Assembly: GCF_963506605.1 (NCBI RefSeq)
Contig: NC_083279.1
Location: forward strand, 82,460,001 to 82,524,000
Direction: 5' to 3'
From: Zootoca vivipara
Lineage: Eukaryota
DNA: 64,000 nucleotides
Position numbers and translations under genes: made by a program. The notes beneath the pieces are model-generated. The model was not told the origin of the DNA. It ran no database searches and was given only the letters and a program-made list of their open reading frames with translations. Below are positions 985-56,533 of this stretch, piece by piece. Within the stretch, counting starts at the first letter, position 1, and every line of letters starts with the position of its first letter.

Positions 985-3900
985 ATGGATCTCTCTATCA
1001 GTGCTGTGGTCTTCCTGTTCCTCACCTACCACCTCTGTGAGGCAGGTGGTCGAAGCTATAATTCAATCCTCATGGTGCCCAATGGCGGGAAGTGGGGAGA
1101 ATGGGGAAAAATTCAAATCTGTCCCTCAGGATATGCATTCGGATTCGCATTGAAGGTAAAGGCTTCTCTATATCTTCTTTTTGATACCCTGACCCCAAGG
1201 AGTAGTATAATAGTATAGTATAGTATAATATAATTAATATAATATAATATAATATAATATATATATTTCAAGTTGCTTCCCATCTTTCTTTCAGGGGCTG
1301 CTCTTGATGATAGGGGGAGGTACTCTGTACTCTCTCCCCCTTACAATATATATTTCAAGTTGATTGCCATCTTTCTTTCTGAACCTATTGCCTGTATATT
1401 GCTGCCTGCAAGGTTCTTTGAAGTGTTGACTGCCATGCTTAAAGATTTAATAGCTCTAAAAAGTCTCCATGCCACTTTGTCTATCCACAATGGAGAGGCT
1501 TAGAGCAAATTGGATTTTACATAAAAGAAAACTACCATGAATCTGGATGGTCTAGAGCAGGCATCCCCAAACTTCGGCCCTCCAGATGTTTTGGACTACA
1601 ATTCCCATCATCCCTGACCACTGGTCCTGTTAGCTAGGGATCATGGGAGTTGTAGGCCAAAACATCTGGAGGGCCGCAGTTTGGGGATGCCTGGTCTAGA
1701 GGAAAAAAGGGACAAGGATACAGACAAGTTTGGAGTGCAATGAGCTGGCAATATTGTGGTCAGGTTTATCTCCCTGAAAGGTGAGCGCCCAATTGGCAAA
1801 TGCAGACTAAACTGTTAGTGTGAAAGCAATCTTGGTCAGTTCTGGTGCTTTCTAGGAGGGTTGCCATACATCCAGATTTTCCCTGAAATGTCCAGGATTT
1901 CAACAACTTTCCCCAAAAAAGCTCAACAAGTTTTTGTGTCCGGGTTTCACTTCTTGAAATAATATGGCAACCCTAACTTCACAAACTGGAGGAAACCTGC
2001 TGTGGAATATGAAGACATAAGAGAGGGATGGAGGGTGCCTCAGCCAGTCATTATCAAGATCAATTTTTTCTTATTAAATTTGCTTACTTGGGGCCATTGG
2101 ACTGGTTGCACCAAAAAGCTACTGTCTTTTGGTGCAGCTGGGAATGTAAACCTTAATCCATAACCAGTTAATACTTGTACACAAGTAGGGGCCTGTAAGC
2201 TACGGTATTACTTTGGAAAATTTAGACTGCAGACGCAGTCTGAATGGGAGTGTTGTCAGAGTCCAAGTTCGGTTAACTACAATAACAACCCCCCTTTTGT
2301 ATCATACATAATATCTTTTTTCTGTTTTGTTTTCTACATGGGTACGATTTCTTGTTTCTTCAGTTTTGTGTCTGGTCTTACTCTGTACACTTGTAATTTT
2401 TTTATTTTTCAATAAAGGATATAAAACAGAATCATAGCTTGCAAAAACAGCTTTATTGCAGTCTCTTTCTCTCTTTTCCACCAGGTACAGGGAAAACAAG
2501 GTATGTCTACTGATGATACTTCCCTCAATGGCATCCGTCTCCATTGCAGTAGGGGTGACGTTGTACAATCTACCGTCGGACCGTGAGCATCTTCTTGGCT
2601 TTTCTCTGTTTTGTTTGGAAAGTGATGGTGTGAGGGGCTGGCTGAAATCTATTATGCTTCAGCACCAGGGCAGGATAATATCAGGTCAGGGTCTATCAGC
2701 CTCATTCTCAGCTCTCGGAGCCTAAGGATACCAACTCTAGGTTGCCTTCCGAATTTTAGAGGGACCCAAGCCCCACATAACAAAGAGGAAAGAGACTGCA
2801 ACAACAGAGTACAAAGGTCAGGAAAAGCAGAGTTTCTTCCTGAGGACCAGACATCCCAAGGAAAGAGAGAGCAAGAGGAAACCGCCATCTATCCTGAGAG
2901 TGGGGAACCTCAAGTCCAGGGGTCAAATGTGGTCCCCTAGGCTTCTCTGTCTGGTCCTCATGAATATCTGTGACTGTTACAGATATCCCAGCTCCTTTGA
3001 TGACCACACAATTGTTTTGGTACCAGAGATGCTCTGTAACATATTCAAGCAAGACCCCAGCCCCCAGTCTCCAATGCAACACAGAAGACAATTGCTAGGG
3101 CTGGTTAGATGTCCTCATGCCACCCCATTTTGTCTATCTTGGATAGACGATAAATCTACTTGTCAGAGCATTTCGGCTTTGAAACCCCAACCACCTCAGT
3201 GGTGGACTGGTGGTAGAAAGCAAAAAAGATATCACATACTGTTGTATAATATTAATATTAATAGTACAGATAACTACAATATATATATAAGAGAACTACA
3301 ATACAGTGGTACCCCACAAGACGAATGCCTCATGCAACGAAAAACTCACAAGATGAAAGCGTTTTGCATTGCGCGAGGCGTCTCGCAAGACGAAGTTTCC
3401 TATGACCGCGCTTCACAAGATGCAGGGCCGTCTTGAGCAGATCGCGCGCCCTGGTGCTGAGGGGCTGAGATCGCTTCGCCGCCCGCCCCGCCCTCGCAGG
3501 GCGCAATTGGTTTCTGTGCGGCTTTGCCAGCCCCGTGCCATGCTGCACTGCGCCACCGGGGGTCTACGAAGAGCCGGCCCTGACAAGATGAATAGGAACG
3601 CATTAACTAAATGGGTAGACGGGGTAAACCAAGAAAATTTTAAACCATGCTTTGCAAGATGAATTTTTTGCTATACAAAGCAACTCACAGAACAAATTAT
3701 TTTTATCTTGCAAGGTACCACTGTATCTTGTAATCAATTTTAGGCACTTACCAGCATCTGTTTTCATGAAAATTGGGGAATAACCTATACGTTTCAATGA
3801 CAGATTTTTTTAAAAAAAAATGTTTAAAAGTAGGAACTTTTCACATAGAGATTTACCAAGCAAGACCTCAATATTTACAAGGAACCAAATTAGATTTCAA

Positions 3901-4627
3901 ATTACCTCATCATACCACAACTTTTTAACACCCCTCAAATCAGGATTTTTAAAGATGGAAAATTCAACACGCCCTAATATTAGGGTTTAAAACCCCTTTA
4001 AAGATTCTTTAGCTCCATCCCTAGATTGTTCCAGGGGCAGATTGGGAGGGTGTGGTGTGGGTGACCCCTGGGTGGCACAGGGCAAATCCACCTAATCCAG
4101 GGCTCACAACACACAGCCCTTCTTATAAGCTGAGGTTTGGGAGACATACTATACCTGATGAGGTCTACAAAAGACACCTTTAAAAAAATCTAAGGAGGCA
4201 ACTGCCCTCTTGACTTTCGTGTGGAAAGCAATTCATTCCAATTTAGGTCATATTTCCAGAGGAGGCAGACATTACCACATTGTCTCTTTTCTTTTCTTTT
4301 CTTTTCTTTTCTTTTCTTTTCTTTTCTTCTTGCAGGTTGGGAGAGTGGACAAAGATTAAGGAATGCCCCAAGGACTACCTGGTTTCCTTCGCTCTCAGAG
4401 TGGAAGACGATCAAGGGATGTCTGATGATACGGCAGCCAACAACATCCAGTTCAACTGTGGAGATGGGACTGGACTGGAGGGCGAGGGACTGGACTTCGG
4501 TACTTACGGCCCGTCGAGCAAGCGCTGCAAAACTGGTTCCATCTGCGGGATCCAAACAAAGGTGGAGATAGGTTCAAGTAATGATGAAACAGCACTTAAT
4601 GATGTCAGGTTCTTCTGCTGTGACTGA
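985..4627 (+). CDS. VMO1: VMO1-like copy 1; exons 985-1155, 2485-2582, 4336-4627; 186 aa secreted protein
   Basis: GT-AG splice sites join 171+98+292 nt in frame. Signal peptide [91 protein letters not shown]; 8 mature Cys, as in the VMO1 family. The ORF track misses exon 2. Confidence 0.93.
1204..1266. repeat. (TATAG)/(TATAA)n microsatellite in intron 1 of copy 1
   Basis: Visible tandem repeat. Confidence 0.85.
1293..1345 (-). mobile_element. 53-bp terminal remnant of the solo LTR found at 50916-51354
   Basis: Matches 51302-51354 (AGGGGCTGCTCTTGATGATAGGGGGAGG...CCCCTTACA). Confidence 0.8.
1558..1693. mobile_element. hAT-type MITE (136 bp, palindromic)
   Basis: TIR CAGGCATCCCCAAACT; 8-bp TSD GTCTAGAG (1550-1557, 1694-1701); empty site in copy 2. 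Confidence 0.92.
3304..3723. mobile_element. Tc1/mariner (Tigger-like) MITE
   Basis: TIR CAGTGGTACC...GGTACCACTG flanked by TA. Confidence 0.8.
3423..3582. mobile_element. hAT-type MITE nested in the Tigger-like MITE
   Basis: TIR CAGGGCCG...CGGCCCTG; 8-bp TSD ACAAGATG. Confidence 0.85.
4286..4328. repeat. (CTTTT)n microsatellite in the polypyrimidine tract before exon 3 of copy 1
   Basis: Visible repeat; much shorter in copy 2. Confidence 0.85.
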
Positions 4628-4701
4628 ATCACCTGGGCTTCATCCTGCTACAACACAGCTGCCTGTTTTCTAATGGTTTGTTGGCATGAAACTTAACCAA
4701 C

Positions 4702-4707
4702 AATAAA
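4702..4707 (+). terminator. Polyadenylation signal of VMO1 copy 1 (paralogous AATAAA at 21441-21446, 37393-37398, 56608-56613)
   Basis: AATAAA 75 nt after the stop codon in all four copies, followed by a GT-rich element. Confidence 0.75.
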
Positions 4708-6015: not shown

Positions 6016-6963
6016 ATAGAATCATAGAGTTGGAAGAGACCACAAGGGCCATCCAGTCCAACCCCCTGCCAAGCAGGAAACACCATCAAAGCATTCTTGA
6101 CATATGGCTGTCAAGCCTCTGCTTAAAGACCTCCAAAGAAGGAGACTCCACCACACTCCTTGGTAGCAAATTCCACTGCTGAACAGCTTTTACTGTCAGG
6201 AAGTTCTTCCTAAAGTTTAGGTGGAATCTTCTTTCTTGAAGTTTGAATCCATTGCTCCGTGTCCGCTTCTCTGGAGCAGCAGAAAACAATCTTTCTCCCT
6301 CCTCCATATGACATCCTTTCATATATTTGAACATGGCTATCATATCACCCCTTAACCTTCTCTTCTCCAGGCTAAACATACCCAGTTCCCTAAGCCGTTC
6401 CTCATAAGGCATCATTTCCAGGCCTTTGACCATTTTGGATGCCCTCCTCTGGACACGTTCCAGCTTGTCAGTATCCTTCTTGAACTGCGGTGCCCAGAAC
6501 TCGGCACAGTACTCCAGGTGAGGTCTGACCAGAGCAGAATACAGTGGTACTATTACTTCCCTTGATCTAGATGCTATACTCCTATTGATGCAGCCCAGAA
6601 TTGCTTTGGCTTTTTTAGCTGCTGCATCACACTGTTGACTCATGTCAAGTCTGTGGTCTACCAAGACTCCTAGGTCCTTTTCACATGTACTGCTCTCAAG
6701 CCAGGTGTCACCCATCCTGTATTTGTGCCTTTCATTTTTTTTGCCCAAGTGTAGTACCTTACATTTCTCCTTGTTAAAATTCATCTTGTTTGCTTTGGCC
6801 CAGCTGTCTAATCTGTTAAGGTCATTTTGAAGTGTGAACCTGTCCTCTGGGGTATTAGCCACCCCTCCCAATTTGGTGTCGTCTGCAAACTTGCCCAGGA
6901 TGCCCTCAAGCCCATCATCCAAGTCATTGATAAAGATGTTGAATAAGACTGGGCCCAAGACAG
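6016..6963 (-). mobile_element. CR1 LINE, 5'-truncated
   Basis: ORF2 C-terminus ([26 protein letters not shown]..), (ATTCTATG)n tail; empty site at about 40950. Confidence 0.95.
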
Positions 6964-7084
6964 CAACTGTTTCAATAGTGAAGCATAAGACAATATGAAG
7001 TTGAATATACAACATCACTAAAAAGTATACAGCCACATCTAAAACGCTGAGGATTCAAAGGTTCACTTTTAAAACATCGGACAA

Positions 7085-13400: not shown

Positions 13401-15233
13401 CCAGGACGATCCGTTAAAGGCAAGTCTCTCTCGGCTGCACAGAGGACACATAGAATCATAGAATAGAATAGAATCATAGAATCATAGAGTTGGAAGAGAC
13501 CACGAGGGCCATCCAGTCCAACTCCCTGCCAAGCAGGAAACACCATCAAAGCATTCCTGACAGATGGCTGTCAAGCCTCCGCTTAAAGACCTCCAAAGAA
13601 GGAGACTCCACCACACTCCTTGGCAGCAAATTCCACTGCCAAACAGCTCTTACTGTCAGGAAGTTCTTCCTGATGTTTAGGTGGAATTTTCTTTCTTGTA
13701 GTTTGAATCCGTTGCTCCGTGTCCGCTTCTCTGGAGCAGCAGAAAACAACCTTTCTCCCTCCTTTATATGACATCCTTTTATATATTTGAACATGGTTAT
13801 CATATCACCCCTTAACCTTCGCTTCTCCAGGCTAAACATACCCAGCTCCCTAAGCCGTTCCTCATAAGGCATCGTTTCCAGGCCTTTGACCATTTTGGTT
13901 GCCCTCTTCTGGACACGTTCCAGCTTATCAGTATCCTTCTTGAACTGTGGTGCCCAGAACTGGACACAATACTCCAGGTGAGGTCTGACCAGAGCAGAAT
14001 ACAGTGGTACTATTACTTCCCTTGATCTAGATGCTATACTCCTATTGATGCAGCCCAGAATTGCATTGGCTTTTTTAGCTGCTGCATCACACTGCTGACT
14101 CATGTCAAGTTTGTGGTCAACCAAAACTCCTAGATCCTTTTCACATGTACTGCTCTCAAGCCAGGTGTCTCCCATCCTGTATTTGTGCCTTTCATTTTTT
14201 TGCCCAAGTGTAGTACTTTACATTTCTCCTTGTTAAAATTCATCTTGTTTGCTTTGGCCCAGTTGTCTAATCTGTTAAGGTCATTCTGAAGTGTGATCCT
14301 GTCCTCTGGGGTGTTAGCCACCCCTCCCAATTTGGTGTCATCTGCAAACTTGCTCAGGATTCCCTCAAGCCCATCATCCAAGTCATTGATAAAGATGTTG
14401 AACAAGACTGGGCCCAAGACAGAACCCTGTGGCACCCCACTAGTCACTACTCTCCAGGATGAGGAGGAGCCATTGATGAGCACCCTTTGGGTTCGGTCAG
14501 TAAGCCAGCTACAAATCCACTGAATGGTAGCATTGTCTAGCCCACATTTTACCAGCTTCTTTACAAGAATATCATGGGGCACCTTGTCAAAGGCCTTGCT
14601 GAAATCAAGATAGGCTACATCCACAGCGTTCCCTTCATCTACCAGGCTTGTAATTCTGTCAAAAAATGAGATCAGATTAGTCTGACATGACTTATTTTTC
14701 AGGAACCCATGCTGACTTTTAGTGATCACAGAGTTTCTTTCTAGGTGCTCACAGACTGTTTGCTTAATGATCTGCTCTAGAATCTTTCCTGGTATTGATG
14801 TCAGGCTGACTGGGCGGTAATTGTTTGGGTCCTCTCTTTTCCCCTTTTTGAAAATAGGGACAACATTTGCCCTCCTCCAGTCTGCTGGAACTTCGCCTGT
14901 TCTCCAGGAATTTTCAAAGATTATTGCCAGTGGTTCTGAAATCACCTCTGCCAGTTCTTTTAATACTCTTGGATGTAGTTCATCTGGCCCTGGAGACTTG
15001 AATACATCTAAACTAGCCAAGTATTCTTGACACGCTGTTAGCTTGTTCCGAATGCACAGGCCGAAAGAGGAAGGTCTGGGTCATGTGGATGGGTATATAT
15101 AGGTCCCTCGATCCGTTTGGACCCATTGGCCAGATTGAACCCAACATCGAGGGACCTACCAATCAGGTGTTGTGACTGACCAATCTTACCCACCCACAAC
15201 ATAGGAGGTCGGTCTCCAGGTCTCACCGCAACA
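10420..15233 (-). mobile_element. Ngaro/DIRS-order retrotransposon remnant (terminus, gag-like ORF, RT, start of RNase H), interrupted by CR1
   Basis: RT: HPHDFKLLG..YYVDKAMPLGCSISC..HYLDDYL; QSLLGHLNFACRVVAPGRPF; RNase H VHSD; frameshifted. Confidence 0.85.
13450..15028 (-). mobile_element. CR1 LINE with full RT domain, inserted in the Ngaro terminus
   Basis: [38 protein letters not shown]; one frameshift in a T-run near 14200; TSD GACAC; empty site at about 47920. Confidence 0.95.
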
Positions 15234-17860: not shown

Positions 17861-18216
17861 TTGACACATTAAATGATTTATAAAAGTACAAGTGAGGAAC
17901 TCAAACTGTAAGATATTATATTATTTTATTATTATCTTTCTGTTTGGGGTGGGACAAATGTTTTGTCAGGGTGGGTAGTAGTGGGTTGTAGCATAACTGT
18001 TTCTTGTTTTGTTTCTACTTTTATTATTTTGTTAAGTTATTGTATAGTTTGTATTTGCTTTTAAATGGGAATGGGTCAGGGCTGCCTGGGGGAAACACAA
18101 GATTCAGGAAGATTTTGAGCAGAGGAGAGAGAACCACAATTTCTGGGGAATAAATTCTCAATGCTGTTATTCTTCCATTCAGTTTTTGCAGCTCGATCTG
18201 GTGCAGTCCACCTTCC

Positions 18217-21200
18217 ATGGATCTCTCTACCAGTGCTGTGGTCTTCCTGTTCCTCACCTACCATCTCTGTGAGGCAGGTGGTCGAAGCTATAATTCAATC
18301 CTCCTGGTGCCCAATGGCGGGGAGTGGGGAAAATGGGGGAAAATTGAATACTGTCCTTCAGGATATGCATACGGATTCTCATTGAAGGTAAAGGCTTATC
18401 TATATCTTCTTTTTGATACCCNNNNNNNNNNNNNNNNNNNNNNNNNNNNNNNNNNNNNNNNNNNNNNNNNNNNNNNNNNNNNNNNNNNNNNNNNNNNNNN
18501 NNNNNNNNNNNNNNNNNNNNNNNNNNNNNNNNNNNNNNNNNNNNNNNNNNNNNNNNNNNNNNNNNNNNNNNNNNNNNNTTCCCATCTTTCTTTCTGAATG
18601 CATTGCATGTATGTTGCTGCCTGCAAGGTTCTTTGAAGTGTTGTCTATCCACAATGGAGAGGCTTAGAGCGAATTGGATTTTACATAAAAGAAAATTACC
18701 ATGAATCTGGATGGTCTAGAGGAAAAAAGGGACAAGGATACAGACAAGTTTGGAGTGCAATTAGCTGGCAATATTGTGGTCAGGTTTATCTCCCAGAAAG
18801 GTGAGCGCCCAATTGGCAAATGCAGACTAAACTGTTAGTGTGAAAGCAATCTTGGTCAGTTCTGGTGCTTTCTAGGAGGGTTGCCATACATCCAGATTTT
18901 CCCTGACATGTCCAGGATTTCAACAACTTTCCCCAAAAAAAAGCTCAACAAGTTTTTGTGTCCGGGTTTCACTTCTTGAAATAATATGGCAACCCTAACT
19001 TCACAAACGGAAGAGTCCAAGTTACAGGTAGGTAGCCGTGTTGGTCTGGATCGAAGTAAAATAAAAAAATTCCTTCAGTAGCACCTTAAAGACCAACTAA
19101 GTTTTTATTTTGGTATGAGCTTTCGTGTGCATGCACACTTCTTCAGTGAAATGGAAGTTTCCAGGCACTTATGTAGAGAAGGGGTGGGGAGGGGTGGGGA
19201 TGGGGAGGGGGGATCACTCAGAAGGGTGGTGGAAATGGGTGATTGACTGACTGATAGCTGTTGATGACCGGAAACGACTGCAAATGGTTTTGTATGAAAA
19301 AGCAAGGGTTGAGATGGCTGAAGATCGCTTATCATGTATAATGAGATAAGAATCCGATATCTCTGTTCAAACCAGGTCCCTCCATGGTTTTGAGCTTGGT
19401 GATAAGTTGCAATTCAGCAACTTCTCTTTCCAGTCTATTTCTGAAATTCTTTTGTAGTAAGACAGCTACTTTGAGATCTTGTATAGAATGTCCTGGGAGA
19501 TTGAAGTGTTCTCCTACTGGTTTTTCTGTCTTCTGGTTCCTGATGTCAGATTTATGTCCATTTATCCTTTGGCGTAGGGTTTGGCCTGTTTGTCCAATAT
19601 AGAGAGCTGAAGGGTCCAAGTTCGGTTAACTACAATAACAACCCCCCTTTTGTATCATACATAATATCTTTTTTCTGTTTTGTTTTCTACATGGGTACTA
19701 TTTCCTGTTTCTTCGGTTTTGTGTCTGGTCTTACTCTGTACACTTGTAATTTTTTTATTTTTTAATAAAGAATATAAAACAGAGTCCCAGCTTGCAAAAA
19801 CAGCTTTATTGCAGTCTCTTTCTCTCTTTTCCACCAGGTACAGGGAAAACAAGGTGGTACTACTGATGATACTTCCCTCAATGGCATCCGTCTCCATTGC
19901 AGTAAAGGTGAAGTTGTACAATCTACCGTCGGACCGTGAGCATCTTCTAAACTTTTCTCTTTTTTGGTTGGAAAGTGATGGTGTGAGGGGCTAGCTGAAA
20001 TCTATTATGCTTCAGCACCAGGGCAGGATAATGTCAGGTCAGGGTCTATCAGCCTCATTCTCTGCTCTCGGAGCCTAAGGATACCAACTCTAGGTTGCCT
20101 TCTGAATTTTAGAGGGACCAAAGCCCCACATAACAAAGAGGAAAGAGACTGCAACAACCAAGTACAAAGGTCAGGAAAAGCAGAGTTTCTTCCTGAGGAC
20201 CACACATCCCAAGGAAAGAGAGAGCAAGAGGAAACCACCATCTATCCTGAGAGTGGGGAACCTCAAGTCCAGGGGTCAAATGTGGTCCCCTAACTTCTCT
20301 GTCTGGTCCTCATGAATATCTGTGACTTTTAGGGGTCAGGACCTCAGGCAGGAAGGAGAGGCAGGCTGAGCAAAAAAGCTGTATGAAAAGGCCAAGACCT
20401 ACCTAACCAGTGGCTGTGCCTTCCTGAGAGAAAGTTGAAGCTCTCCTTCCTGCTGGGGGCACTGGCTTAAAAAATCAATGCCTCCACTCAACAGCTGTTT
20501 AGCAGAGACCTTGATCCTGTGGGGTGCAGATGCTGCTTTGCCAGTGGCTTTCTTGCAGGAAAGTCACTACCACTTAAGTGAGTGGATCCCATTCTGGGTT
20601 GGTGCTGGTCACTCAACTTCATGAAGGAGTAGCAACACCCCACAGAATCAGGTCGTTCTGCTTAATATCTGTTAGGCAGGGGAGTAAATCCTGCATAGCA
20701 CTGATGCACCCTGACCTTAAACAAACCCCATTCTTAACAGAATATTAGGGTTTAAAATCCCTTTAAAGATTATTTAGCTCCATCCCTAGATTGTTTCAGG
20801 GGCAGATTGGGAGGGTGTGGTGTGGGTGACCCCTGGGTGACACAGGGCAAATCCACCTAATCCAGGGGTCACAACACACAGCCCTTCTTAGAAGATGAGG
20901 TTTGGGAGACATACTATACCTGATGAGGTCTACAAAAGACGCCTTTAAAAAATCTAAGGAGGCAACTGCCCTCTTGACTTTCGTGTGGAGAGCAATTCAT
21001 TCTGATTTGGATCATATTTCCAGAGGAGGCAGACCTTACCACGTTGTCTCTTTTCTTTTCTTTTCTTCTTGCAGGTTGGGAGAGTGGACAAAGATTCAGG
21101 ATTGCCCCAAGGACTACCTGGTTTCCTTCGCTCTGAGAGTGGAAGCCAATCAAAAGATTGGTGATGATACGGCAGCCAACAACATCCAGTTCAACTGTGG

Positions 21201-21366
21201 AGATGGGACTGGACTGGAGGGCAAGGGACTGGACTTCGGTACTTACGGCCCGTGGAGCAAGCGCTGCACCGCTGGTTCCATCTGCGGGATCCAAACAAAG
21301 GTGGAGATAGGTTCAAGTAATGATGAAACAGCACTTAATGATGTCAGGTTCTTCTGCTGTGACTGA
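18217..21366 (+). CDS. VMO1: VMO1-like copy 2; exons 18217-18387, 19838-19935, 21075-21366; 186 aa
   Basis: Same exon sizes and phases as copy 1, canonical splice sites, no stops; exon 2 [32 protein letters not shown]. Confidence 0.93.
18422..18578. other. Assembly gap (157 N)
   Basis: Run of N at the intron-1 microsatellite position. Confidence 0.99.
19024..19613 (-). mobile_element. Penelope-like retroelement, 5'-truncated, in intron 1 of copy 2
   Basis: GIY-YIG endonuclease half [34 protein letters not shown]; TSD GTCCAAGTT. Confidence 0.92.
19112..19146 (-). ncRNA. Minimal hammerhead ribozyme core in the Penelope terminus
   Basis: CTGAAGA-A-GTGTG CATG CACAC-GAAA-GC-TC-ATACC; 5' arm of helix I missing. 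Confidence 0.6.
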
Positions 21367-23397: not shown

Positions 23398-23742
23398 TGT
23401 CGGAGAACCAGCCGACTCTTAGGTGCGAGGAAATCATGAGACGAGAGTCAAGAGTTTCAGATTGAGAGCATGAGCAGAGTGCGCTGACTGCCTCTCAGCC
23501 TCAGCTCCTTTATTAAGGATCCTTTCCTCGTAAAAAACATTAACCTTTTAACCTATACATGACTCATGCAAACAAGGAAGATGTGTAAACCGACAGGCTG
23601 GCGCCAGTGGTCCTGTGGTAAATCACTTGATTGATTACCCCCCAATAAACCTGTGCCTTACACAGAGAACTCCATTTGTACATTCCCACAGAGTATTTCC
23701 TGTGTACATTCCCACAGAGTATTTCCTGTGTACATTCCCACA
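23398..23742 (-). repeat. ERV 3' LTR
   Basis: Preceded on the minus strand by PPT AAAAAGAAAGAGGTGA; contains AATAAA on the minus strand. Confidence 0.95.
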
Positions 23743-23762
23743 TCACCTCTTTCTTTTTATTT

Positions 23763-25100: not shown

Positions 25101-25199
25101 AATGATGTTTCAGACCGGGTGACAGGTGCTGTCCTCCAGAAAGAGTGTAGAAAGGTCTGCCTCCTCCCTTTGCGGCATCTGCGACTGAATGGGCTGAAG

Positions 25200-28307: not shown

Positions 28308-28461
28308 TGTAAATGCAGGAAGAGAAAGATAAGCAATAGCTGGGAGCCAACTCACCGGGGATCCTAAGATGAGGTAGACGTCTGAACCCTTGCCGGGCGG
28401 GTGAGTAGCTGATGCAGGACCACGACGTGCGTCCTTTCAACAATGGCGTAGAACTTTTTAG

Positions 28462-28478
28462 CCTCACACGGGGCACCA
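28462..28478 (-). promoter_or_regulatory. ERV primer-binding site complementary to elongator tRNA-Met
   Basis: TGGTGCCCCGTGTGAGG starts 2 nt after the 5' LTR and matches the vertebrate tRNA-Met(e) 3' end CCTCACACGGGGCACCA. Confidence 0.8.
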
Positions 28479-28480
28479 CT

Positions 28481-31032: not shown

Positions 31033-32250
31033 AGCTGAGGGTGAAATTCTGCAGTTCTGGTATTCTGTGGACATATCTACACCACAAAGTTATATCAGAT
31101 TTCTACCAAGTGAACTGTCAGGCTGAGGACCCGCATGTGGCTCCAGAGTGACAGTTTGCCCAACCCTGTTCTAAAGCAAGATGTACGGTCCTGGTCTTTG
31201 GCCTTGAAAGGATGTCCTCACCCTTCTGCTAGGTCTCTCCACTCCCCCTGGGAAATGGCTTCTGCTTGTGCAGGAACTTTGTAGAAGCCACTGGTAATAG
31301 AGGTGAGGAAAGCACAGGACCAGGAAGACTTCATAGCCTTCTCCATCTGCTCTGCTCTGTGATGGATCAGTGGAGCATGGGAGTTGCGTTGCTCAGGACA
31401 GAGAGTTCCTACATTTCCTTGTCCTGAACCCTTTAAATTCCCTGTTCACAGTCATGTCTCTTCACTCAGTTTATGGACTCTCTCCTTCTGCCTGCAGGGT
31501 TGCAAGTCTATGAAACAGAATTGGAGGGAGTTTGCATAGGAGAGACATTTTAGCAAGGGCAAAGGGTAGGTAAGAAATGCACATTTTAGTTAGTTTTTTC
31601 AATAATATTTTTATTAGTTTTCATTTACAATCCAATAATAGCCTCATTATAACAATACCATTTTATAATACAATTATTAATACCAATCCTTCAAATGTCG
31701 AATTATATAATTTAGGTAAAGTAGCCTCCCACGTGCTAGAATTGATGGCTTGTTTATTTGCTTTATTTCTGAATTCCAAAATCTTATTAATTTTCATTGC
31801 ATTCCAGTCATAATAATAATAATTCCCTTATACAACAACTGCAATATTAATAATTTCTATTCTCTTCTTGTTGACACATTAAATGATTTATAAAAGTACA
31901 AGTGAGGAACTCAAACTGTAAGATATTATATTATTTTATTACTGTATTATCTTTCTGTTTGGGGTGGGACAAATGTTTAGTCAGGGTGGGTAGTAGTGGG
32001 CTGTAGCATAACTGTTTCTTGTTTTGTTTCTACTTTTATTATTTTGTTAAGTTATTGTATAGTTTGTATTTGCTTTTTAAGGGGAAAGGGTCAGGGCTGC
32101 CTGGGAGGGGTTTCCCTCTAGGGGGAAACACAAGATTCAGGAAGATTTTGAGCAGAGGACAGAGAACCACAATTTCTGGGGAATAAATTGTCAAGGCTGC
32201 TATTCTTCCATTCAGTTTTTTGCAGCTCGATCTGGTGCAGTCCACCTTCC

Positions 32251-32469
32251 ATGGATCTCTCTACCAGTGCTGTGGTCTTCCTGTACCTCACCTACCGCCT
32301 CTGTGAGGCAGGAGATAGGAAGTATAATTCAGTCCTCACGGTGCCCAATGGCGGGAAGTGGGGAGAATGGGGAAAAATTGAATTCTGTCCTTCAGGATAT
32401 GCATCAGGATTCCTAGTGAAGGTAAAGGCTTCTCTATATCTTCTTTTTGATACCCTGATCCCAAGGAAT

Positions 32470-32535
<66 letters not shown>

Positions 32536-35500
32536 GTTGATTGCCATCTTTCTTTCTGAACCAGTTCCTGTATATTGCTGCCTGCAAGGTGCTTTGAAGT
32601 GTTGACTGCCATGCTTAAAGATTTAATAGCTCTAAAAAGTCTCCATGCCACTTTGTCTATCCACACTGGAGAGGCTTAGAGTGAATTGGATTTTACATAA
32701 AAGAAAATTACCATGAATCTGGATGGACTGGCGGAAAAAAGGGACAAGGATACAGACATGTTTGGAGTGCAATGAGCTGGCAATATTGTGGTCAGGTTTA
32801 TCTCCCTGAAAGGTGAGCGCCCTATTGGCAAATACAGACTAAACTGTTAGTGTGGAAGCAACCTTGATAAGTGCTTTCTAGGAGGCTTGCCATACATCCA
32901 GATTTTGGGTGACATGTCCAGGATTTCAACAACTTTCCCCCAAAAGCTCAACAACATTTTCGTGTCCAGATTTCACTTCTTGAAATAATATGGCAACCCT
33001 AACTTCATAAACTGGAGGAAACCTGCTGTTGAATATGAAGACATGAGAGAGGGTGCCTTAGCCAGTCATTATCAAGATCAATTTTTTCTTATTAAATTTG
33101 CTTACTTCGGGCCATTGGACTGGTTGCACCACAAAGCTACTGTCTTTTGATGCAGCTGGAAATGTAAACCTTAATCCATAACCAGTAATACTTGTACACA
33201 AGTAGGGGCCTGTAATTATGAACAGATAACTGCTAATTCAGGTTGCAAGCTAGTAGTTTGGAAAATTCAGACTGCAGACGCAGTCTGAATGTGAGTGTTG
33301 TCAGAGTCCTGGTTCAGTTAACTACAATAACAACCCCCCTTTTGTAACATAAAACAATATCTTTTTTCTGTTTTGTTTTCTACATGGGTACTATTTCTTG
33401 TTTCTTCGGCTTTGTGTCTGGTCTTACTCTGTACACTTGTAATTTTGTACTTCTTATTTTTCAATAAAGAATATAAAACAGAGTCCCAGCTTGCAAAAAC
33501 AGCTTTATTGCAGTCTCTTTCTCTGTTTTCCACCAGTATGCTGTACCACAAGGTTTTGATGGTGATGACACCGGCCTCAATGGCATCCGTCTCCTTTGTA
33601 GTAGTGGTGAAGTTATACAATCTAGCGTCGGAATGTAAGCATCTTCTTGATTTTTCTCTTTGTTGCTTGGAAAGTGATGGTGTGAGGGGCTGGCTGAAAT
33701 CTATTATGCTTCAGCACCAGGGCAGGAATATGTCAGGGTCTATCAGCCTCATTCTCAGTTCTCGGAGTCTAAAGATACCAACTCTAGGTTGCCTTCTGAA
33801 TTTTAGAGGGACCCAAGCCCCACATAACAAAGAGGAAAGAGACTGCAACAACCGAGTACAAAGGTCAGGAAAAGCAGAGTTTCTTCCTGAGGACCACACA
33901 TCCCAAGGAAAGAGAGAGCAAGAGGAAACCATCATCTATCCTGAGAGTGGGGAACCTCAAGTCCAGGGGTCAAATGTGGTCCCCTAACTTCTCTGTCTGG
34001 TCCTCATGAATATCTGTGACTGTTAGGGGTCAGGACCTCAGGCAGGAAGGAGAGGCAGGCTGAGCAAAAAAGCTGTATGAAAAGGCCAAGACCTACCTTT
34101 ACCAGTGGCTGTGCATTCCTGAGAGAAAGTAGGCACAATACTGAAGCTCTCCTACCTGCCAGAGGAACTGGCCTAAAAGATCAATGCCTCCACTCAACAG
34201 CTGTTTAGCAGAGACCTTGATCCTGTGGGGTGCAGGTGCTGCTTTGCCAGTGGCTTTCTTGCAGGAGAGTCACTACCACTTACAGAGCTGGTTACATCAT
34301 AGACAATTAAATGAACAGTTTAAGGAAGACAGTAAGAAAGGTTTTAGTTATACAGTTTCAAACTTTCAAAAAGAGATAGTCAAGAGTGATACGAAATTAC
34401 TTTAAAAAAATTTATAATCTCCTACTTTATGGGGAAACGTTAGATGAAGTATGTTTCCGAGCACATTTCAAAGTGTTGGTGCTGACCTTTAAAGCCCTAA
34501 ACGGCCTTGGTCCAGTATACCTGAAGGAGCATCTCCACCTCCATCGCTCTGCCCGGACACTGAGGTCCAGTGCCGAGGGCCTTCTGATGGTTCCCTCGCT
34601 GCCAGAAGTCAAGTTACAGGGAACCAGGCAGAGGGCTTTTTGGTAAGTGGCACCCACCCTCCCACCAGATGTCAAAGAGAAAAACAACTACCAAACTTTT
34701 AGAAGACATCTGCTGCCAAGGAGTGTGTTGGAGTCTCCTTCTTTGAAGGTCTTTAAGCAGAGGCTTGACAGCCATCTGTCAGGAATGCTTTGATGGTGTT
34801 TCCTGCTGGGCAGGGGGTTGGACTGGTCTCTTCCAACTCTATGATTCTATGATTAATCTTTTTGGATGCAGAGAAGGTCTTTGATAACATATCCTGGGAA
34901 TTTATTAATGGATATTGGACAATTGTGTATAAGAGGAATTATAGCGATATATTCTAATCGAAAAGCAAAATTAATAGTAAATAATGTAGTAACAGAAAAT
35001 ATTGAGATTACGAAAGGTACAAGACAGGGATGTCCATTGTCACCATTGTTATCCATCTCGGTTCTGGAAGTCTTCCTAAAGACCAGACACCCCCAAACTG
35101 CGGCCCTCCAGATGTTCTGGCCTACAACTCCCATGATCCCTAGCTAACAGGACCAGTGGTCAGGGATGATGGGAATTGTAGTCCAAACATCTGGAGCGCC
35201 GGAGTTTGGGGATGCCTGCTAAGGACTATAAGGGAAAATGAGAAAATAAAAGGAATTTCAGTGGGCAGAAAAGAGTATAAAGCCTTTGCAGACGACTTGG
35301 TATTGACAGTGGAAGACCCATTATGCAGTATTAATGAGGTATTAGAAGAAATTGAACAATTCGGACAAGTTGCAGGTTTTAAATTAAACAAAAAGAAAAC
35401 TAAAATGTTGGCTAAAAATGTGAAACAAGATTTGGTGGATAGGTTGCAACAACAGACTGGTATAGAAATAGTCAAAAAAGTAAAGTATTTCGGAATTTGG

Positions 35501-50259: not shown

Positions 50260-50662
50260 AATATTAAAAATTTCTATTCTATTCTTGTTGACACATTAAA
50301 TGATTTATAAGAGTACAAGTGAGGAACTCAAACTTTATGATATTGTATTATTTTATTATCATCTTTCTGTTTGCGGTGGGACAAATGTTTAGTCAGGGTG
50401 GGTAGTAGTTTAATTTTAGCATAATTGTTTCCTGCTTTGTTTCTACTTTCATTATTTTGTTATGTTATTGTATAGTTTGTATTTGCTTTATAAGGGGAAA
50501 GGGTCAGGGCTGCCTGGGAGGGGTTTCCCTCTAGGGGGAAACACAAGATTCAGGAAGATTTTGAGCAGAGGAGAGAGAACCACAATTTCTGGGGAATAAA
50601 TTGTCAAGGCTGTTATTCTTCCATTCAGTTTTTGCAGCTCGATCTGGTGCAGTCCACCTTCC

Positions 50663-53600
50663 ATGGATCTCTCTACCAGTGCTGTGGTCTTCCTGTTCCT
50701 CACCTACCACCTCTGTGAGGCAGGAGATCGGAAGTATAATTCAGTCCTCACGGTGCCCAATGGCGGGAAGTGGGGAGAATGGGGGAAAATTGAATTCTGT
50801 CCCTCAGGATATGCATCTGGATTCTCATTGAAGGTAAAGGCTTCCCAAGGAGTAGTCACTATAATATAATATAATATAATATAATATAATATAATATAAT
50901 ATAATATAATATAAATGTCAGGGGATTCTTGCGACTACTCTCGAGTAACGACGCTCCTCATGTTACTTTTCCACAACGTGTTTATTGGTGCCTCTATTTA
51001 CAGTGAGCTAGGTGCAGAAACATGTCTTCTTACTCCAATGCAGAATCTGGAAGTGCCCCCCGGCGCGAACGCCCCCAACATAAATGTCGCGGGACACTGA
51101 ATCTCCTCCCCTTTCTTCTCTTTCGTAATTCCGGAACCGGATGAAAGGGTCTGCGGTCCATGTTTTCCCTCTCCCCATTTTCCCCTTCTCTCTCCTCCCG
51201 CCTGTGGAGTCTGGGCTCTTTCCTCCTGCCTGAGCCCTGGCACTCTCTCTCCGTGTCCTGACTAGCCTCCCCCGAGCCTGTGCTTCCTTCGCTGCTCGGG
51301 GAGGGGCTGCTCTTGATGATAGGGGGAGGTACTCTGTACTCTCTCCCCCTTACAATATATATTTCAAGTTGATTGCCATCTTTCTTTCTGAACCTATTGC
51401 CTGTATATTGCTGCCTGCAAGGTGCTTTGAAGTGTTGACTGCCATGCTTAAAGATTTAATAGCTGTAAAAAGTATCCATGTCACTTTGTCTATCCACACT
51501 GGAGAGGCTAAGAGTGAATTGGATTTTACATAAAAGAAAACTACCATGAATCTGGATGGACTGGAGGAAAAAAGGGACAAGGATACAGACAAGTTTGGAG
51601 TGCAATGAGCTGGCAATATTGTGGTCAGGTTTATCTCCCTGAAAGGTGAGCACCCTATTGGCAAATACAGACTAAGCTGTTAGTGTGGAAGCAACCTTGA
51701 TAAGTTCTGGTGCTTTCTAGGTGGGTTGCCATACATCCAGATTTTCCTTGACGTGTCCAGGATTTCAACAACTTTCCCCCCAAAAGCTCAACAACAGTTT
51801 TGTGTCCAGATTTCACTTCTTGAAATAATATGGCAACCATAACTTCACAAACTGGAGGAAACCTGCTGTTGAATATGAAGACATAAGAGAGGGATGGAGG
51901 GTGCCTTAGCCAGTCATTAGCAACATCAATTTTTTTCTTATTAAAATTGCTTACTTGGGGCCATTGGACTGGTTTCACCACAAAGCTACTGTATTTTGGT
52001 GCAGCTGGGAATGAAAACCTTAATCCATAACCAGTTAATACTTGTACACAAGTAGGGGCCTGTAATTATGAACAGATAACTGCTAATTCAGGTTGCAAGC
52101 TAGTAGTTTGGAAAATTCAGACTGCAGATGTAGTCAGAGTCCAAGTTCGGTTAACTACAATAACAACCCCCCCCTTTTGTAACATACAAAATATCTTTTT
52201 TCTGTTTTGTTTTCTACATGGGTACTATTTCTTGTTTCTTTGATTTTGTGTCTCGTCTTACTCTGTACACTTGTAATTTTATACTTTTTATTTTTCAATA
52301 AAGAATATAACACAGAGTCCCAGCTTGCAAAAACAGCTTTATTACAGTCTCTTTCTCTCTTTTCCACCAGCCATCAGTAGAAGATTTTGATGGTGATGCT
52401 ACCGGCCTCAGTGGCATCCGTCTCCATTGCAGTAGTGGTGAAGTTATACAATCTAGAGTCGGACTGTAAGTATCTTCTTGATTTTTCTCTTTGTTGCTTG
52501 GAAAGTGATGGTGTAAGGGGCTGGCTGAAATCTATTATGCTTCAGCACCAGGACAGGATAATGTCAGGGCCTATCAGCCTCATTCTCAGCTCTCGGAGTC
52601 TAAGGATACCAACTCTAGGTTGCCTTCTGAATTTTAGAGGGACCCAAGCCCCACATAACAAAGAGGAAAGAGACTGCAACAACAGAGTACAAAGGTCAGG
52701 AAAAGCAGAGTTTCTTCCTGAGGACCACACATCCCAAGGAAAGAGAGAGCAAGAGGAAACCACCATCTATCCTGAGAGTGGGGAACCTCAAGTCCAGGGG
52801 TCAAATGTGGTCCCCTAACTTCTCTGTCTGGTCCTCATGAATATCTGTGACTGTTAGGGGTCAGGACCTCAGGCAGGAAGGAGAGGCAGGCTGAGCAAAA
52901 AAGCTGTATGAAAAGGCCAAGACCTACCTTTACCAGTGGCTGTGCCTTCCTGAGAGAAAGGAGGCACAATACTGAAGCTCTCCTTCCTGCCAGAGGAACT
53001 GGCCTAAAAGATCAATGCCTCCAATCAACAGCTGTTTAGCAGAGACCTTGATACTGTGGGGTCCAGGTGCTGCTTTGCCAGTGGCTTTCTTGCAGGAAAG
53101 TCACTACCACTTAAGTGAGTGGATCCCATCCTGCATGGTGCTGGTCACTGGACTTCATGAAGGAGTAGCACCACAACACAGAATCAGGTCATTCTGCTTA
53201 ATATCTGTTAGGCAGGGGAGTAAATCCTACATATCACTGATGAACCCTGACCTTAAAAAAAACCCCATTCTTAAGAGAATATTACGGTTTAAAACCCCTT
53301 TAAAGATTCTTCAGCTCCATCCCTAGATTGTTCCAGGGGCATATTGGGAGGGTGTGGTGTGGGTGACCCCTGGGTGGCACAGGGCAAATCCACCTAATCC
53401 AGGGGTCACAACACACAGCCCTACTTAAAGTTGAGGTTTAAGTAGAGCTGGACCATAAAGAAGGCTGATCGCCGAAGAATTGATGCTTTTGAATTATGGT
53501 GCTGGAGGAGACTCTTGAGAGTCCCATGGACTGCAAGAAGATCAAACCTATCCATTCTTAAGGAAATCAGCCCTGAGTGCTCCCTGGAAGGACAGATCGT

Positions 53601-56533
53601 GAAGCTGAGGCTCCAATACTTTGGCCACCTCATGAGAAGAGAAGATTCCTTGGAAAAGACCTTGATGTTGGGAAAGATGGAGGGCACAAGGAGAAGGGGA
53701 CGACAGAGGACGAGATAGGGGACGACAGAGGACGAGATGGTTGGACAGTGTTCTCGAAGCTACGAACATGAGTTTGACCAAACTGCGGGAGGCAGTGCAA
53801 GACAGGAATGCCTGGCGTGCTATGGTCCATGGGGTCACGAAGAGTCGGACACGACTAAACGATTAAACAACAACAAACATACTATTGCATTAGGAACAAA
53901 ACGAGAGAAAAAGTAAAGATGGAAATTTTAAAAAAATTATGGAGAATGAGAAAAAGCTAATTAAAAATCCAAACAATGTGAAAATAAATCAGAATATCAA
54001 AATGTTACAAAGTCAGTTTGCAATGATTATTAATCAAGAAGTGAAATGGAATATAAAAAGAATGAGACAGAAATTTTTTGAATTTGCAAATAAATCAGGC
54101 AAATGGCTGGTGTGGCAAATCAAAAAAAGGAAATCCCAAATTAAAATTAATAAAATAACCTTGGAAGGAAAAGAAGTAGAGAATCTGAAAGAAATTAGGA
54201 ATGGATTTTAAAATTTTTATAGACAGTTATATAAAAAAGCTGGAAAGGGAAATATAAGCAGAATTGAAGAATATCTAAACAAAAAGAAGTGCAACAAATT
54301 CCATCAGAATAGAAAGAGCGACTGAATGAGTTAATGGAAATTGAAGAAATTTAAAATGCAATAAAAGAATTAAAAAGTGGAAAGGCGCCAGGACCAGATG
54401 GATTCGCTGCAAAATATTATAAAGAACTGAAACATACCCTGCTTGTACCGTTAGAAGAAGTTATGAATAATATATTAAAGAATGGAGAAATACCAGAAAC
54501 ATGGAACATGGAAAGAAGCAAATATCACATTAATACCCAAACCAGACTCTGATTCATTGTAAGTTAAAAACTATTGGCCGATTTCATTATTAAATAATGA
54601 TTATAAATTATTTGCAAGTATTTTGGCAAATAGATTGAAAAAAGTATTGAATGAAATAATACATACAGATCAAGCAGGCTTTCTTCCTGGCCGACAGATG
54701 AAATATAATATAAGGAATGTGGTGAATATCATTGAATATTTGATGGCCAGGAATGAAAAGTAAGCGACATTAATCTTTTTGGATGCAGAGAAGGCCTTTG
54801 ATAATATATCCTGGGAATTTATGGTAAAGAATTTGGAATTAATGGATATTGGACAATTGTTTATAAGAGGAATTAAAGCGATATATTCTAATCGAAAAGC
54901 AAAATTAATAGTAAATAATGTAGTAACAGAAAATATTGAGATTACGAAAGGTACAAGACAGGGATGTCCATTGTCACCATTATTATCCATCTCGGTTCTG
55001 GAAGTCTTCCTAAAGACCAGGCATCCCCAAACTGCAGCCCTCCAGAAGTTTTGGCATACAACTCCCATGATCCCTAGCTAACAGGACCAGTGGTCAGGGA
55101 TGATGGGAATCGTAGTCCAAAACATCTGGAGGGCCGAAGTTTGGGGATGCCTCCTAAAGACTATAAGGGAAAATGAGAAAATAAAAGGAATTTCAGTTGG
55201 CAGAAGAGAGTATAAAGCCTTTGCAGACGACTTGGCATTAACAGTGGAAGACCCATTATGCAGTATTAATGAGGTATTAGAAGAAATTGAACAATTCGGA
55301 CAAGTTGCAGGTTTTAAATTAAACAAAAAGAAAACTAAAATGTTGGCTAAAAATGTGAAACAAGATTTGGTGGATAGGTTGCAACAACAGACTGGTATAG
55401 AAATAGTCAAAAAAGTAAAGTATTTTGGAATTTGGTTAATATTTAATATTTAATATTTGAGTAATATTTACTGATTGTAATGTTTGAAAGAAAATATAAA
55501 GAAAATGATGTATTGATGGTATATCACACCAGTGAAATTAGCCAAAACGTATAAAACAGGTAATAAATGTTGGAAATGTAAGGAAAAAGAAGGAACGTTT
55601 TATCATATATGGTGGGAATGTAAGAAAGTGAAAAACTTCTGGAAAATGATATACAATGAGATGAAAAAGATGTTAAGATATACATTAATTAAAAACCCAG
55701 CTTTTCTACTTGGTATTGTAGGAGAGGATATTAGCAGACAAGATAAAAAAAACTGTTTTTGTATGTGACGACGGCATTAAGAGTACTATTGGCACAGAGA
55801 TGGAAACAAGAAGAATTACCGATGATAGAAGAATGGCAGACGAAGTTAATGGACTACACAAAATTGGACAAGATGACAGGGAGAATTCAAAACTGGCGGG
55901 ACCAGAGGTTCTTGAAGGACTGAACTAAATTTGAGAATTATTTGAAAAACAATTGTAAACAACAAATTATGCTAGTAGGTTTGCAAGAAGTTTTGTAAGG
56001 AGAAATACATGAAATATTATAGAGAACATTTAGGAATATAAAAATTGGTTATTGTTTATTAAAAGTAATAGTGAATTACGGGACACAAGGATAAGTTAGG
56101 AAGATTGGAAAACTTTAGATGGTTTGATGGAAGTACAAAAAAAATATTGTACTGTATAAGATATGAATGAATGTTAAAGGATGTATCGAATTTCCAGGGA
56201 GGCAGACATTACCATATTGTCTTTTTTTTTTTTTGCAGGTGGGGAGAGTGGAAAGAGGTTAAGAAATGCCCCTCCAAGGCCTACCTGGTTGCCTTCGCTC
56301 TGAGAGTGGAAGACGAACATGGGAAAATTGATAATACAGGAGCCAACAACATCGAGTTCAACTGTGGAGATGAGACTAGACTGGAGGGCAACGGACTGGA
56401 CTTCGGTAAATACGGCCCGTGGAGCAAGCGCTGCACCGCTGGTGCCATCTGTGGGATTCAAACAAAGGTGCAGGGTTTAGTTGACCTTGATAACACAGCA
56501 CTTAATGATGTCAAGTTCTTCTGCTGCGACTGA
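50663..56533 (+). CDS. VMO1: VMO1-like copy 4; exons 50663-50833, 52371-52465, 56239-56533; 186 aa
   Basis: 171+95+295 nt in frame; exon 2 [31 protein letters not shown]; exon 3 [24 protein letters not shown]...[14 protein letters not shown]. Confidence 0.9.
50859..50914. repeat. (TATAA)n microsatellite in intron 1 of copy 4
   Basis: Visible repeat. Confidence 0.9.
50916..51354 (-). mobile_element. Solo LTR (probably Gypsy-type) in intron 1 of copy 4
   Basis: TGTCAGGGG...CCCCTTACA inverted termini in an AT repeat; AATAAA on the minus strand; TSD obscured by the microsatellite. Confidence 0.75.
53444..53876 (+). mobile_element. BovB (RTE) LINE 3' fragment
   Basis: [45 protein letters not shown]; (CAA)n tail. 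Confidence 0.93.
53886..56180 (+). mobile_element. Degraded L1-clade LINE in intron 2 of copy 4 (same insertion as in copy 3)
   Basis: [37 protein letters not shown]; same 3' junction before exon 3. Confidence 0.88.
55018..55153. mobile_element. hAT MITE (paralog of 35084-35218)
   Basis: 8-bp TSD CTAAAGAC. Confidence 0.9.

What the first reader, a model, noticed from the sequence alone, without database searches (positions are those of the whole stretch)
2485..56533. Three hypervariable loops on a constant scaffold: candidate diversified recognition system
The strongest variation, including in-frame length changes, lies just before each of the three DDT-x-x-N motifs. Loop 1: VQGKQGMST / VQGKQGGTT / YAVPQGFDG / PSVEDFDG. 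Loop 2: VEDDQGMS / VEANQKIG / VEPDKGKLR / VEDEHGKI. Loop 3: VEIGSSN / VEIGSSN / VEGLVAG / VQGLVDL. Cys and beta-strands stay fixed. In a threefold beta-prism these equivalent loops should cluster on one face, the proposed carbohydrate-binding end. Inference: an antibody-like repertoire of secreted binders with different specificities (microbial glycans, sperm or egg ligands, or chemical signals).
Basis: partly seen in the sequence, partly recalled or inferred. Interest (0 to 1): 0.8.

Follow-up and report, generated by a model that had tools for sequence, protein, structure and literature searches.

The report
Fast-evolving VMO1 lectin-like gene cluster
The common lizard carries a row of four intact copies of an egg-membrane, lectin-like gene whose protein-coding parts, above all three matching surface loops, have diverged much faster than the surrounding non-coding DNA; this points to selection for different binding partners, but it is not an antibody-like system.

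Summary
The window is from Zootoca vivipara. It holds four intact, same-strand, three-exon VMO1-like genes (Pfam VOMI). Models A, B and D equal NCBI proteins exactly.

The assembly gap lies in intron 1 of gene B, 34 nt after the exon-1 donor, so it touches no reading frame.

An unbiased scan ranks those three loops as the three most variable stretches.

New here: exons are more diverged than their introns and flanks in every gene pair (exon 2: 27% against 3% in the adjoining 50 bp). Loop non-synonymous divergence is 6-10 times the non-coding divergence. The promoter, 5'UTR, signal peptide and 3'UTR are nearly identical in all four genes. Other vertebrates keep a conserved xPQGxGDDT loop; the lacertid clade does not.

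The AlphaFold model of B matches chicken VMO-I (TM 0.93). The loops are the tips of three disulfide-clamped hairpins.

Caveats:
- The scaffold also varies (dN/dS about 1).
- Loop dN/dS above 1 is only marginal (p=0.07).
- Only 5 of 12 motifs are strict DDTxxN.
- No expression was seen in three RNA runs.
- No coordinates were available for a 3D test.

"Antibody-like repertoire" is overstated. This is a small germline family (at least 7 genes) under diversifying selection. The scan also noted this same stretch separately as a tandem expansion (s1-853945).

The parts
855..984 (+). Gene A proximal promoter and 5'UTR block with a TATA-like AATAAAT, nearly identical in all four genes
   Evidence: alignment; (0% divergence in the last 50 bp)
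985..1155 (+). Gene A exon 1 (signal peptide plus start of repeat 1)
   Evidence: the model equals NCBI protein P0121
2485..2582 (+). Gene A exon 2; loop 1 VQGKQGMST is at 2485-2511
4336..4627 (+). Gene A exon 3 including the stop codon; loop 2 at 4400-4423, loop 3 at 4562-4582
   Evidence: Pfam VOMI E=3.6e-30; 1vmo_A E=9e-39
18087..18216 (+). Gene B proximal promoter and 5'UTR block
18217..18387 (+). Gene B exon 1
   Evidence: the model equals P0001
18422..18578 (.). Assembly gap inside intron 1 of gene B. It is not coding and was not filled.
19838..19935 (+). Gene B exon 2; loop 1 VQGKQGGTT at 19838-19864
21075..21366 (+). Gene B exon 3; loop 2 at 21139-21162, loop 3 at 21301-21321
32121..32250 (+). 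Gene C proximal promoter and 5'UTR block
32251..32421 (+). Gene C exon 1
33537..33634 (+). Gene C exon 2; loop 1 YAVPQGFDG at 33537-33563
37021..37318 (+). Gene C exon 3; loop 2 at 37088-37114 (one codon longer), loop 3 at 37253-37273
50533..50662 (+). Gene D proximal promoter and 5'UTR block
50663..50833 (+). Gene D exon 1
   Evidence: the model equals P0011
52371..52465 (+). Gene D exon 2; loop 1 PSVEDFDG at 52371-52394 (one codon shorter)
56239..56533 (+). Gene D exon 3; loop 2 at 56306-56329, loop 3 at 56468-56488

Best explanation
The window holds part of a lacertid-specific tandem array of secreted VMO-I (VOMI family) beta-prism proteins in Zootoca vivipara. There are four intact genes here and at least seven in the genome.

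All four copies share an almost identical promoter, 5'UTR, signal peptide, introns and 3'UTR, so they are probably made in the same tissue. The mature-protein exons have diverged much faster than this non-coding DNA. The divergence is strongest in three equivalent segments: the tips of the long beta2-beta3 hairpins of the three internal repeats, just before the conserved Asp-x-Thr turn.

The most likely cause is diversifying selection on a ligand-binding surface at the end of the prism opposite the disulfide base, around the acidic pocket. Under this reading the paralogs bind different, probably glycan, ligands.

Shown here: gene structure, family membership, fold, and the pattern and rate of variation. 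Inferred: that the loops form one binding face, that the ligands are carbohydrates, and the biological setting (oviduct/egg coat, seminal or other exocrine secretion, in a host-microbe or sperm-egg contest).
For: Gene structure and family:
- Four intact three-exon genes. A, B and D are identical to NCBI VMO1-like proteins of Zootoca vivipara.
- Pfam VOMI scores 106-114 bits on exon 3 alone.
- AlphaFold models of B and D have pLDDT 84 and 87. Model B matches 1VMO with TM 0.93, rmsd 1.7 A and VIA Z 28.4.

Pattern and rate of variation:
- The loops are the three most variable stretches.
- Exons are more diverged than introns and flanks in all six gene pairs, for example A-C exon 2 27.6% and exon 3 16.6% against 4-6%. 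The transitions at exon borders are sharp.
- Loop pN is 0.187 (A-B) and 0.298 (C-D) against non-coding 0.030 and 0.043 (p=8e-6 and 7e-10).
- Loop 2 of A and B differs at 8 of 18 nt, all non-synonymous.
- The loop/scaffold entropy ratio is 2.99 in the lacertid clade and 1.24 in 77 other vertebrate sequences, which keep xPQGxGDDT.

Structure and neighbours:
- Each hairpin is closed by conserved Cys at one end and carries the loop at the other. The review PMC9363672 places the disulfides at the base and an acidic sugar-sized cavity at the top of 1VMO.
- Structural neighbours are almost all glycan binders or receptor-binding toxin domains: jacalin lectins, ZG16, the lamprey immune protein and Cry domain II.
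Against: - The classical test is weak. Loop pN/pS pooled over independent contrasts is 1.88 (Fisher p=0.07), because synonymous sites are few.
- The scaffold also evolves at dN/dS of about 0.9-1.0, which fits partial relaxation.
- Synonymous divergence in exons is itself 2-3 times the non-coding divergence. So either non-coding DNA has been homogenised or an exon-biased mutational process contributes.
- Gene D has lost the second Asp in all three motifs, and the whole lacertid clade has lost it in repeat 3. The ancestral sugar pocket may therefore be altered or lost.
- No reads fell on gene A exons or its 3'UTR in three Zootoca RNA-seq runs (tissue unknown, 6% of each run read).
- No coordinates were available, so clustering of the loops on one face rests on topology and on a review's description, not on measured distances.
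- No binding data exist for any lacertid VMO1-like protein in the searched literature.
Confidence: 0.6

Rival explanations
1. Relaxed constraint. The copies are redundant duplicates drifting neutrally, and the loops vary most simply because surface loops tolerate change.
For: - Scaffold dN/dS is about 1 and loop dN/dS is not significantly above 1.
- Decay of the near-invariant Asp, Asn and Ala of the motifs in gene D.
- No expression in three RNA runs.
- Gene C has no matching protein in the collection.
Against: - Neutral drift cannot exceed the neutral rate, yet loop pN is 6-10 times the divergence of adjacent introns and UTRs, and even the scaffold is 1.7-2.7 times that divergence.
- All four reading frames, all splice sites, all 8 Cys and the invariant core residues are intact.
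- Both AlphaFold models are confident.
- Other vertebrates conserve these loops.
Confidence: 0.12
2. Old, functionally settled paralogs with concerted evolution of non-coding DNA. The A/B and C/D lineages are ancient, gene conversion has homogenised introns and flanks, and selection only prevents conversion inside exons. The exon/intron contrast would then overstate how recent and how fast the loop change is.
For: - In the 48-row tree, (C,D) groups with a Lacerta protein (95/85) and (A,B,P0019) with Podarcis proteins (98/92).
- Exon synonymous divergence exceeds intron divergence 2-3 fold.
- Long blocks of 85-98% identity run across the array.
Against: - The cross-species groupings dissolve in a smaller data set.
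- An AU test does not reject a Zootoca-only clade (p=0.106 and 0.247).
- A and B, which are clearly recent (3% non-coding divergence), already differ at 8 of 18 nt in loop 2.
- This scenario still needs selection that keeps exons different, so it is a variant of the main explanation rather than its opposite.
Confidence: 0.2
3. An exon-segment replacement process supplies the loop variants. Candidates are micro-conversion from other array members or 'accelerated segment switch' as proposed for snake three-finger toxins. Selection then only sorts what this process produces.
For: - Differences are packed into short blocks with identical flanks, for example 8 of 18 nt in loop 2 of A and B (p=2e-8 against a 3% background).
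- In-frame length changes occur in the loops.
- Synonymous divergence is raised in exons.
- The same picture (conserved introns, switched exon segments, fixed Cys) is described for viperid 3FTx genes (PMC2474615).
Against: - No donor segments or pseudo-exons exist in the window.
- The loop codons of A and B differ by scattered single-base changes within codons that are otherwise alignable, not by wholesale unrelated sequence.
- The other array members could not be fetched as DNA.
Confidence: 0.15
4. One reading: an antibody-like repertoire of binders, meaning a large or somatically diversified recognition system.
For: Variable loops on a fixed fold. The lamprey immune protein and lectins are among the structural neighbours.
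Against: - Only a handful of germline genes are found.
- There are no cassettes, no recombination-signal-like arrangement and no extra exon copies.
- The promoters are ordinary and identical.
Confidence: 0.03

Closest known systems
[quoted passage not shown]
   Same: - 59-60% identity to gene B, TM 0.93, Z 28.4.
- Three internal repeats, 8 Cys, the invariant first Asp and Thr of each turn, and a signal peptide.
   Different: - The chicken protein is cationic (pI 10, PMC9363672), while the four lizard proteins are acidic (pI about 5).
- The conserved xPQGxG loop is lost.
- The second Asp of repeat 3 is lost in the whole lacertid clade, and in all three repeats of gene D.
- The lizard genes form a multi-copy array with accelerated exon divergence.
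Snake venom multigene families with accelerated exon evolution (three-finger toxins, PLA2; PMC2474615, PMC6062510)
   Same: Tandem paralogs with conserved signal peptide, introns and UTRs, fixed Cys, and hyperdivergent exon segments.
   Different: - Unrelated fold.
- Lacertids are not known to use these proteins as toxins.
- The tissue of expression is unknown.
- This is a resemblance in evolutionary mode only.
Beta-prism I binders: jacalin-related lectins, ZG16, and Cry delta-endotoxin domain II
   Same: Same fold class (Z 13-15 for the lectins, 7-11 for Cry domain II). From general knowledge, in these proteins the loops at one end of the prism make the sugar or receptor site, and in Cry toxins they set specificity.
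   Different: - Sequence identity is 5-17%, so they are not the same family.
- The sugar-binding motifs of jacalins were not tested here.
- Loop equivalence between the families was not established.

Membership tests
VOMI / VMO-I (PF03762) | Significant match to the family profile above the curated cut-off | tested here: met
   Exon 3 alone of A-D scores 105.7-113.5 bits against a cut-off of 25. Exons 1 and 2 give weaker matches in the expected profile positions. 1vmo_A E=9e-39.
VOMI / VMO-I (PF03762) | Beta-prism fold of three Greek-key sheets from three internal repeats | tested here: met
   AlphaFold model of B against 1VMO: TM 0.93, rmsd 1.7 A, Z 28.4. The model of D has the same strand pattern and pLDDT 86.8. 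A and C were not folded.
VOMI / VMO-I (PF03762) | Eight conserved cysteines (four disulfides) | tested here: met
   All four mature proteins have 8 Cys at the family's invariant or near-invariant columns. The bonding itself cannot be tested here.
VOMI / VMO-I (PF03762) | Invariant first Asp and Thr of the D-D-T turn in each repeat | tested here: met
   D67, D120 and D173 (B numbering) and the Thr residues are kept in A-D.
VOMI / VMO-I (PF03762) | Second Asp of each D-D-T turn. This is family-typical (92-97% conserved outside the lacertid clade), not part of the Pfam definition. | tested here: not met
   Replaced in repeat 3 of all 14 lacertid-clade proteins, and in repeats 1 and 2 of gene D. 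Only 5 of 12 motifs are strict DDTxxN.
VOMI / VMO-I (PF03762) | Binding of GlcNAc oligosaccharides or heparin | not testable with these tools
   Known for the chicken protein only (PMC9363672).
Somatically or cassette-diversified immune receptors (Ig, VLR-like) | Donor cassettes or rearranging segments next to the gene, or many germline copies | tested here: not met
   tblastn finds only the 12 exons of the four genes in 64 kb. The intergenic DNA is made of retroelements.
Jacalin-related lectins | Sequence-family membership and the sugar-binding loop motifs | not tested
   Fold resemblance only (TM about 0.65, 11-17% identity).

The most novel reading that the evidence does not exclude
Lacertid lizards have turned the VMO-I beta-prism into a small germline repertoire of binders. 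Three symmetry-related apical loops around a remodelled acidic pocket are diversified by strong selection, possibly fed by exon-limited segment replacement. All copies are driven by one shared promoter in a single secretory tissue, and they act in species-specific sperm-egg recognition or in defence of the egg or mucosa against microbes.
Probability: 0.2. Interest if true: 0.75.

Novelty: new variant of a known kind. Interest (0 to 1): 0.5.

Why it matters
VMO-I has had a solved structure since 1994 but still lacks an agreed function. A clade in which selection has singled out three equivalent loops next to the conserved acidic turn points directly to the working surface of the fold. It also provides natural variants for binding experiments.

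The exon-over-intron divergence is a textbook signature known mainly from venom and immune genes. Finding it in an egg-coat or exocrine lectin-like family of a species that has both egg-laying and live-bearing populations would tie it to reproductive or host-microbe conflict.

The result is still modest. The genes are already annotated, the family and the evolutionary mode are known, and function and expression remain open.

Tried and rejected
- Expression. One sequencing-run run and one read-laying run gave no reads on gene A exons or its 3'UTR in three Zootoca RNA runs of unknown tissue. Only an intronic repeat was covered. This is uninformative about function.
I therefore had no DNA for the other Zootoca paralogs (P0007, P0019, P0122) or for the Podarcis and Lacerta loci, and could run no codon site models, no orthologous intron comparison and no map of the whole array.
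- 3D mapping of variable sites. The structure tools return no coordinates, so only topology could be used.
- Age of the paralogs. The large tree suggested cross-species orthology, but a focused tree and AU tests left it unresolved.
- Femoral-gland signal idea. The supplements of the Lacerta agilis femoral-gland proteome hold no 'vitelline' or 'VMO1' entry.
- Literature. No paper in the searched library links VMO1 with lacertids or describes this expansion.
- Gene C. The joined model has no reference id, so the full-length protein was never sent to a search or fold tool. It was searched exon by exon and joined only inside scripts.
- The large representative search was not used, because the family was already clear.


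Full report
**What is there**

The 64-kb window (44.6% G+C, one N run at 18422-18578) carries four genes on the + strand, each with three coding exons and canonical GT/AG borders:
- A: 985-1155, 2485-2582, 4336-4627
- B: 18217-18387, 19838-19935, 21075-21366
- C: 32251-32421, 33537-33634, 37021-37318
- D: 50663-50833, 52371-52465, 56239-56533

The proteins are 186, 186, 188 and 186 aa. tblastn finds only these twelve exons, with no relics or cassettes. The spacers are LINE fragments and one endogenous retrovirus.

A word search with the exon-3 reading frame of B identifies the organism as Zootoca vivipara. My joined models of B, D and A are identical to the NCBI 'VMO1-like' proteins P0001, P0011 and P0121. 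Gene C has no counterpart in the collection.

Three more Zootoca paralogs lie outside the window (P0007, P0019, P0122), and Podarcis and Lacerta have similar sets.

**The gap**

The N run begins 34 nt after the exon-1 donor of gene B and ends 1,259 nt before exon 2, so no reading frame crosses it. Its flanks align in the same order and orientation to intron 1 of gene C, where 197 nt separate the two matching blocks. B has 62 read bases plus the estimated 157 N in that interval. The gap was not filled. Whether exon 1 truly belongs to the same copy as exons 2-3 cannot be proved, but its divergence from A (7.0%) matches that of exons 2 and 3 (7.1% and 5.1%).

**Family and fold**

Exon 3 of each gene alone scores 106-114 bits on Pfam VOMI (cut-off 25) and E=9e-39 on chicken VMO-I (1VMO).

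AlphaFold models built with an 88-90 sequence alignment have pLDDT 83.7 (B) and 86.8 (D). Model B matches 1VMO with TM 0.93, rmsd 1.7 A and Z 28.4. The next matches are jacalin-type lectins, ZG16, a lamprey immune protein and Cry toxin domain II.

In both models each variable segment is the low-confidence tip of a long hairpin: strands 51-58/71-78, 105-112/124-131 and 158-167/176-185 in B. The open end of each hairpin carries the conserved Cys. A review of 1VMO places the four disulfides at the base of the prism and an acidic, sugar-sized cavity at the top (PMC9363672). By this topology the three loops and the Asp-rich turns sit at the top. That is inference, because no coordinates were available for distance measurement.

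**The observation**

All eleven peptides are at the stated coordinates. An unbiased sliding scan ranks the three loops as the three most variable 8-residue windows. The fourth is the segment before Cys100 (B numbering), which by topology lies near the base.

The loops make up 15% of the mature columns and hold 34% of all pairwise differences, so the scaffold is not constant. Only 5 of 12 motifs are strict DDTxxN.

**Rates**

In all six gene pairs the exons are more diverged than alignable introns and flanks. For A-C, exon 2 is 27.6% and exon 3 is 16.6% diverged, against 6.2%, 4.0% and 5.7% for the non-coding parts.

In 50-bp bins the change is abrupt:
- Exon 2 is 26.9% diverged, against 3.0% just upstream.
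- Exon 3 is 18.7% diverged, against 3-7% in the 3'UTR.
- The last 50 bp before the ATG are identical in all four genes.

About 130 bp of promoter, the signal peptide and a poly(A) signal at +75 are shared.

Nei-Gojobori estimates give whole-gene dN/dS of 1.2-1.4 (0.88 for C-D), 1.6-6.7 for the loops and about 1 for the scaffold. Pooled over three independent contrasts, the loop pN/pS is 1.88 (p=0.07) and the scaffold value is 0.88.

Against non-coding DNA the contrast is strong:
- Loop pN is 0.187 against 0.030 for A-B (p=8e-6).
- Loop pN is 0.298 against 0.043 for C-D (p=7e-10).
- For A-C, scaffold non-synonymous and synonymous divergence are both 2.7 times the non-coding value.

Loop 2 of A and B differs at 8 of 18 nt, all amino-acid changing.

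**Family context**

Among 11 lacertid-clade proteins the loop/scaffold entropy ratio is 2.99. Among 77 other vertebrate sequences it is 1.24. Those sequences keep the xPQGxGDDT loop, and their most variable parts lie elsewhere.

The whole lacertid clade has replaced the second Asp of repeat 3. Gene D has also replaced D68, N72, D121 and A123. The four mature proteins are acidic (pI about 5), unlike the cationic chicken protein.

**Age**

A 48-row tree groups (C,D) with a Lacerta protein and (A,B) with Podarcis proteins. A focused tree is unresolved. AU tests do not reject a Zootoca-only clade (p=0.106 and 0.247). So it is open whether the exon excess reflects recent acceleration or old paralogs whose non-coding DNA was homogenised. 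Either route needs selection that keeps the exons different.

**Function**

Nothing here shows function directly. Three Zootoca RNA runs of unknown tissue gave zero depth on gene A exons and its 3'UTR. The Lacerta femoral-gland proteome lists no VMO1.

Elsewhere VMO-I occurs in oviduct and egg, tears, semen, a snake venom gland and male frog lip glands.

My reading is a co-regulated set of secreted lectin-like binders whose apical loops are under diversifying selection. The evolutionary mode resembles venom multigene families (PMC2474615). 'Antibody-like' is not warranted.

- The joined model of gene C was not sent to any search or fold tool, because it has no reference. It was searched exon by exon.
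- The retrovirus between B and C was only observed.

Noticed in passing
window 23398-28825 (- strand): An endogenous retrovirus lies between genes B and C. Its two 345-bp LTRs (23398-23742 and 28481-28825) are 100% identical. It has a gag ORF (p10, p24), and pol-derived matches (Integrase_Zn; RVT_thumb, the latter below Pfam's cut-off) in an overlapping ORF; no complete pol was seen. I observed it only.
   Followed up: partly
window 41860-43970 and 44682-46826: A 2.1-kb direct duplication at 98.1% identity in the C-D spacer. Next to it, 43969-44683 is a 99% copy of the 3' flank of gene D (56915-57628).
   Followed up: no
window 1553-1700 (intron 1 of gene A): A short dispersed repeat draws several hundred-fold RNA read depth on both strands, with many variants and loose ends. 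The reads therefore come from copies elsewhere in the genome, not from gene A.
   Followed up: no
window 32251-37318 (gene C): Gene C is intact (188 aa, 8 Cys, canonical splice sites). It has no identical or near-identical protein in the searched collection, whereas A, B and D do, so it may be unannotated.
   Followed up: partly
window 4357-4598: Run X1, filed under a different organism label from the Zootoca runs, holds a 254-nt contig identical to part of exon 3 of gene A. Whether it is RNA or DNA is not on record.
   Followed up: no
window 6086-7036, 13546-15020, 28931-29533, 60297-60911: Reverse-transcriptase fragments of non-LTR elements fill the spacers. Several of them are themselves part of the duplicated blocks.
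   Followed up: no
window 62635-63675: A G+C-rich stretch (53.7%) with a 346-aa open frame and no Pfam match. It could be a CpG island or the first exon of a neighbouring gene.
   Followed up: no
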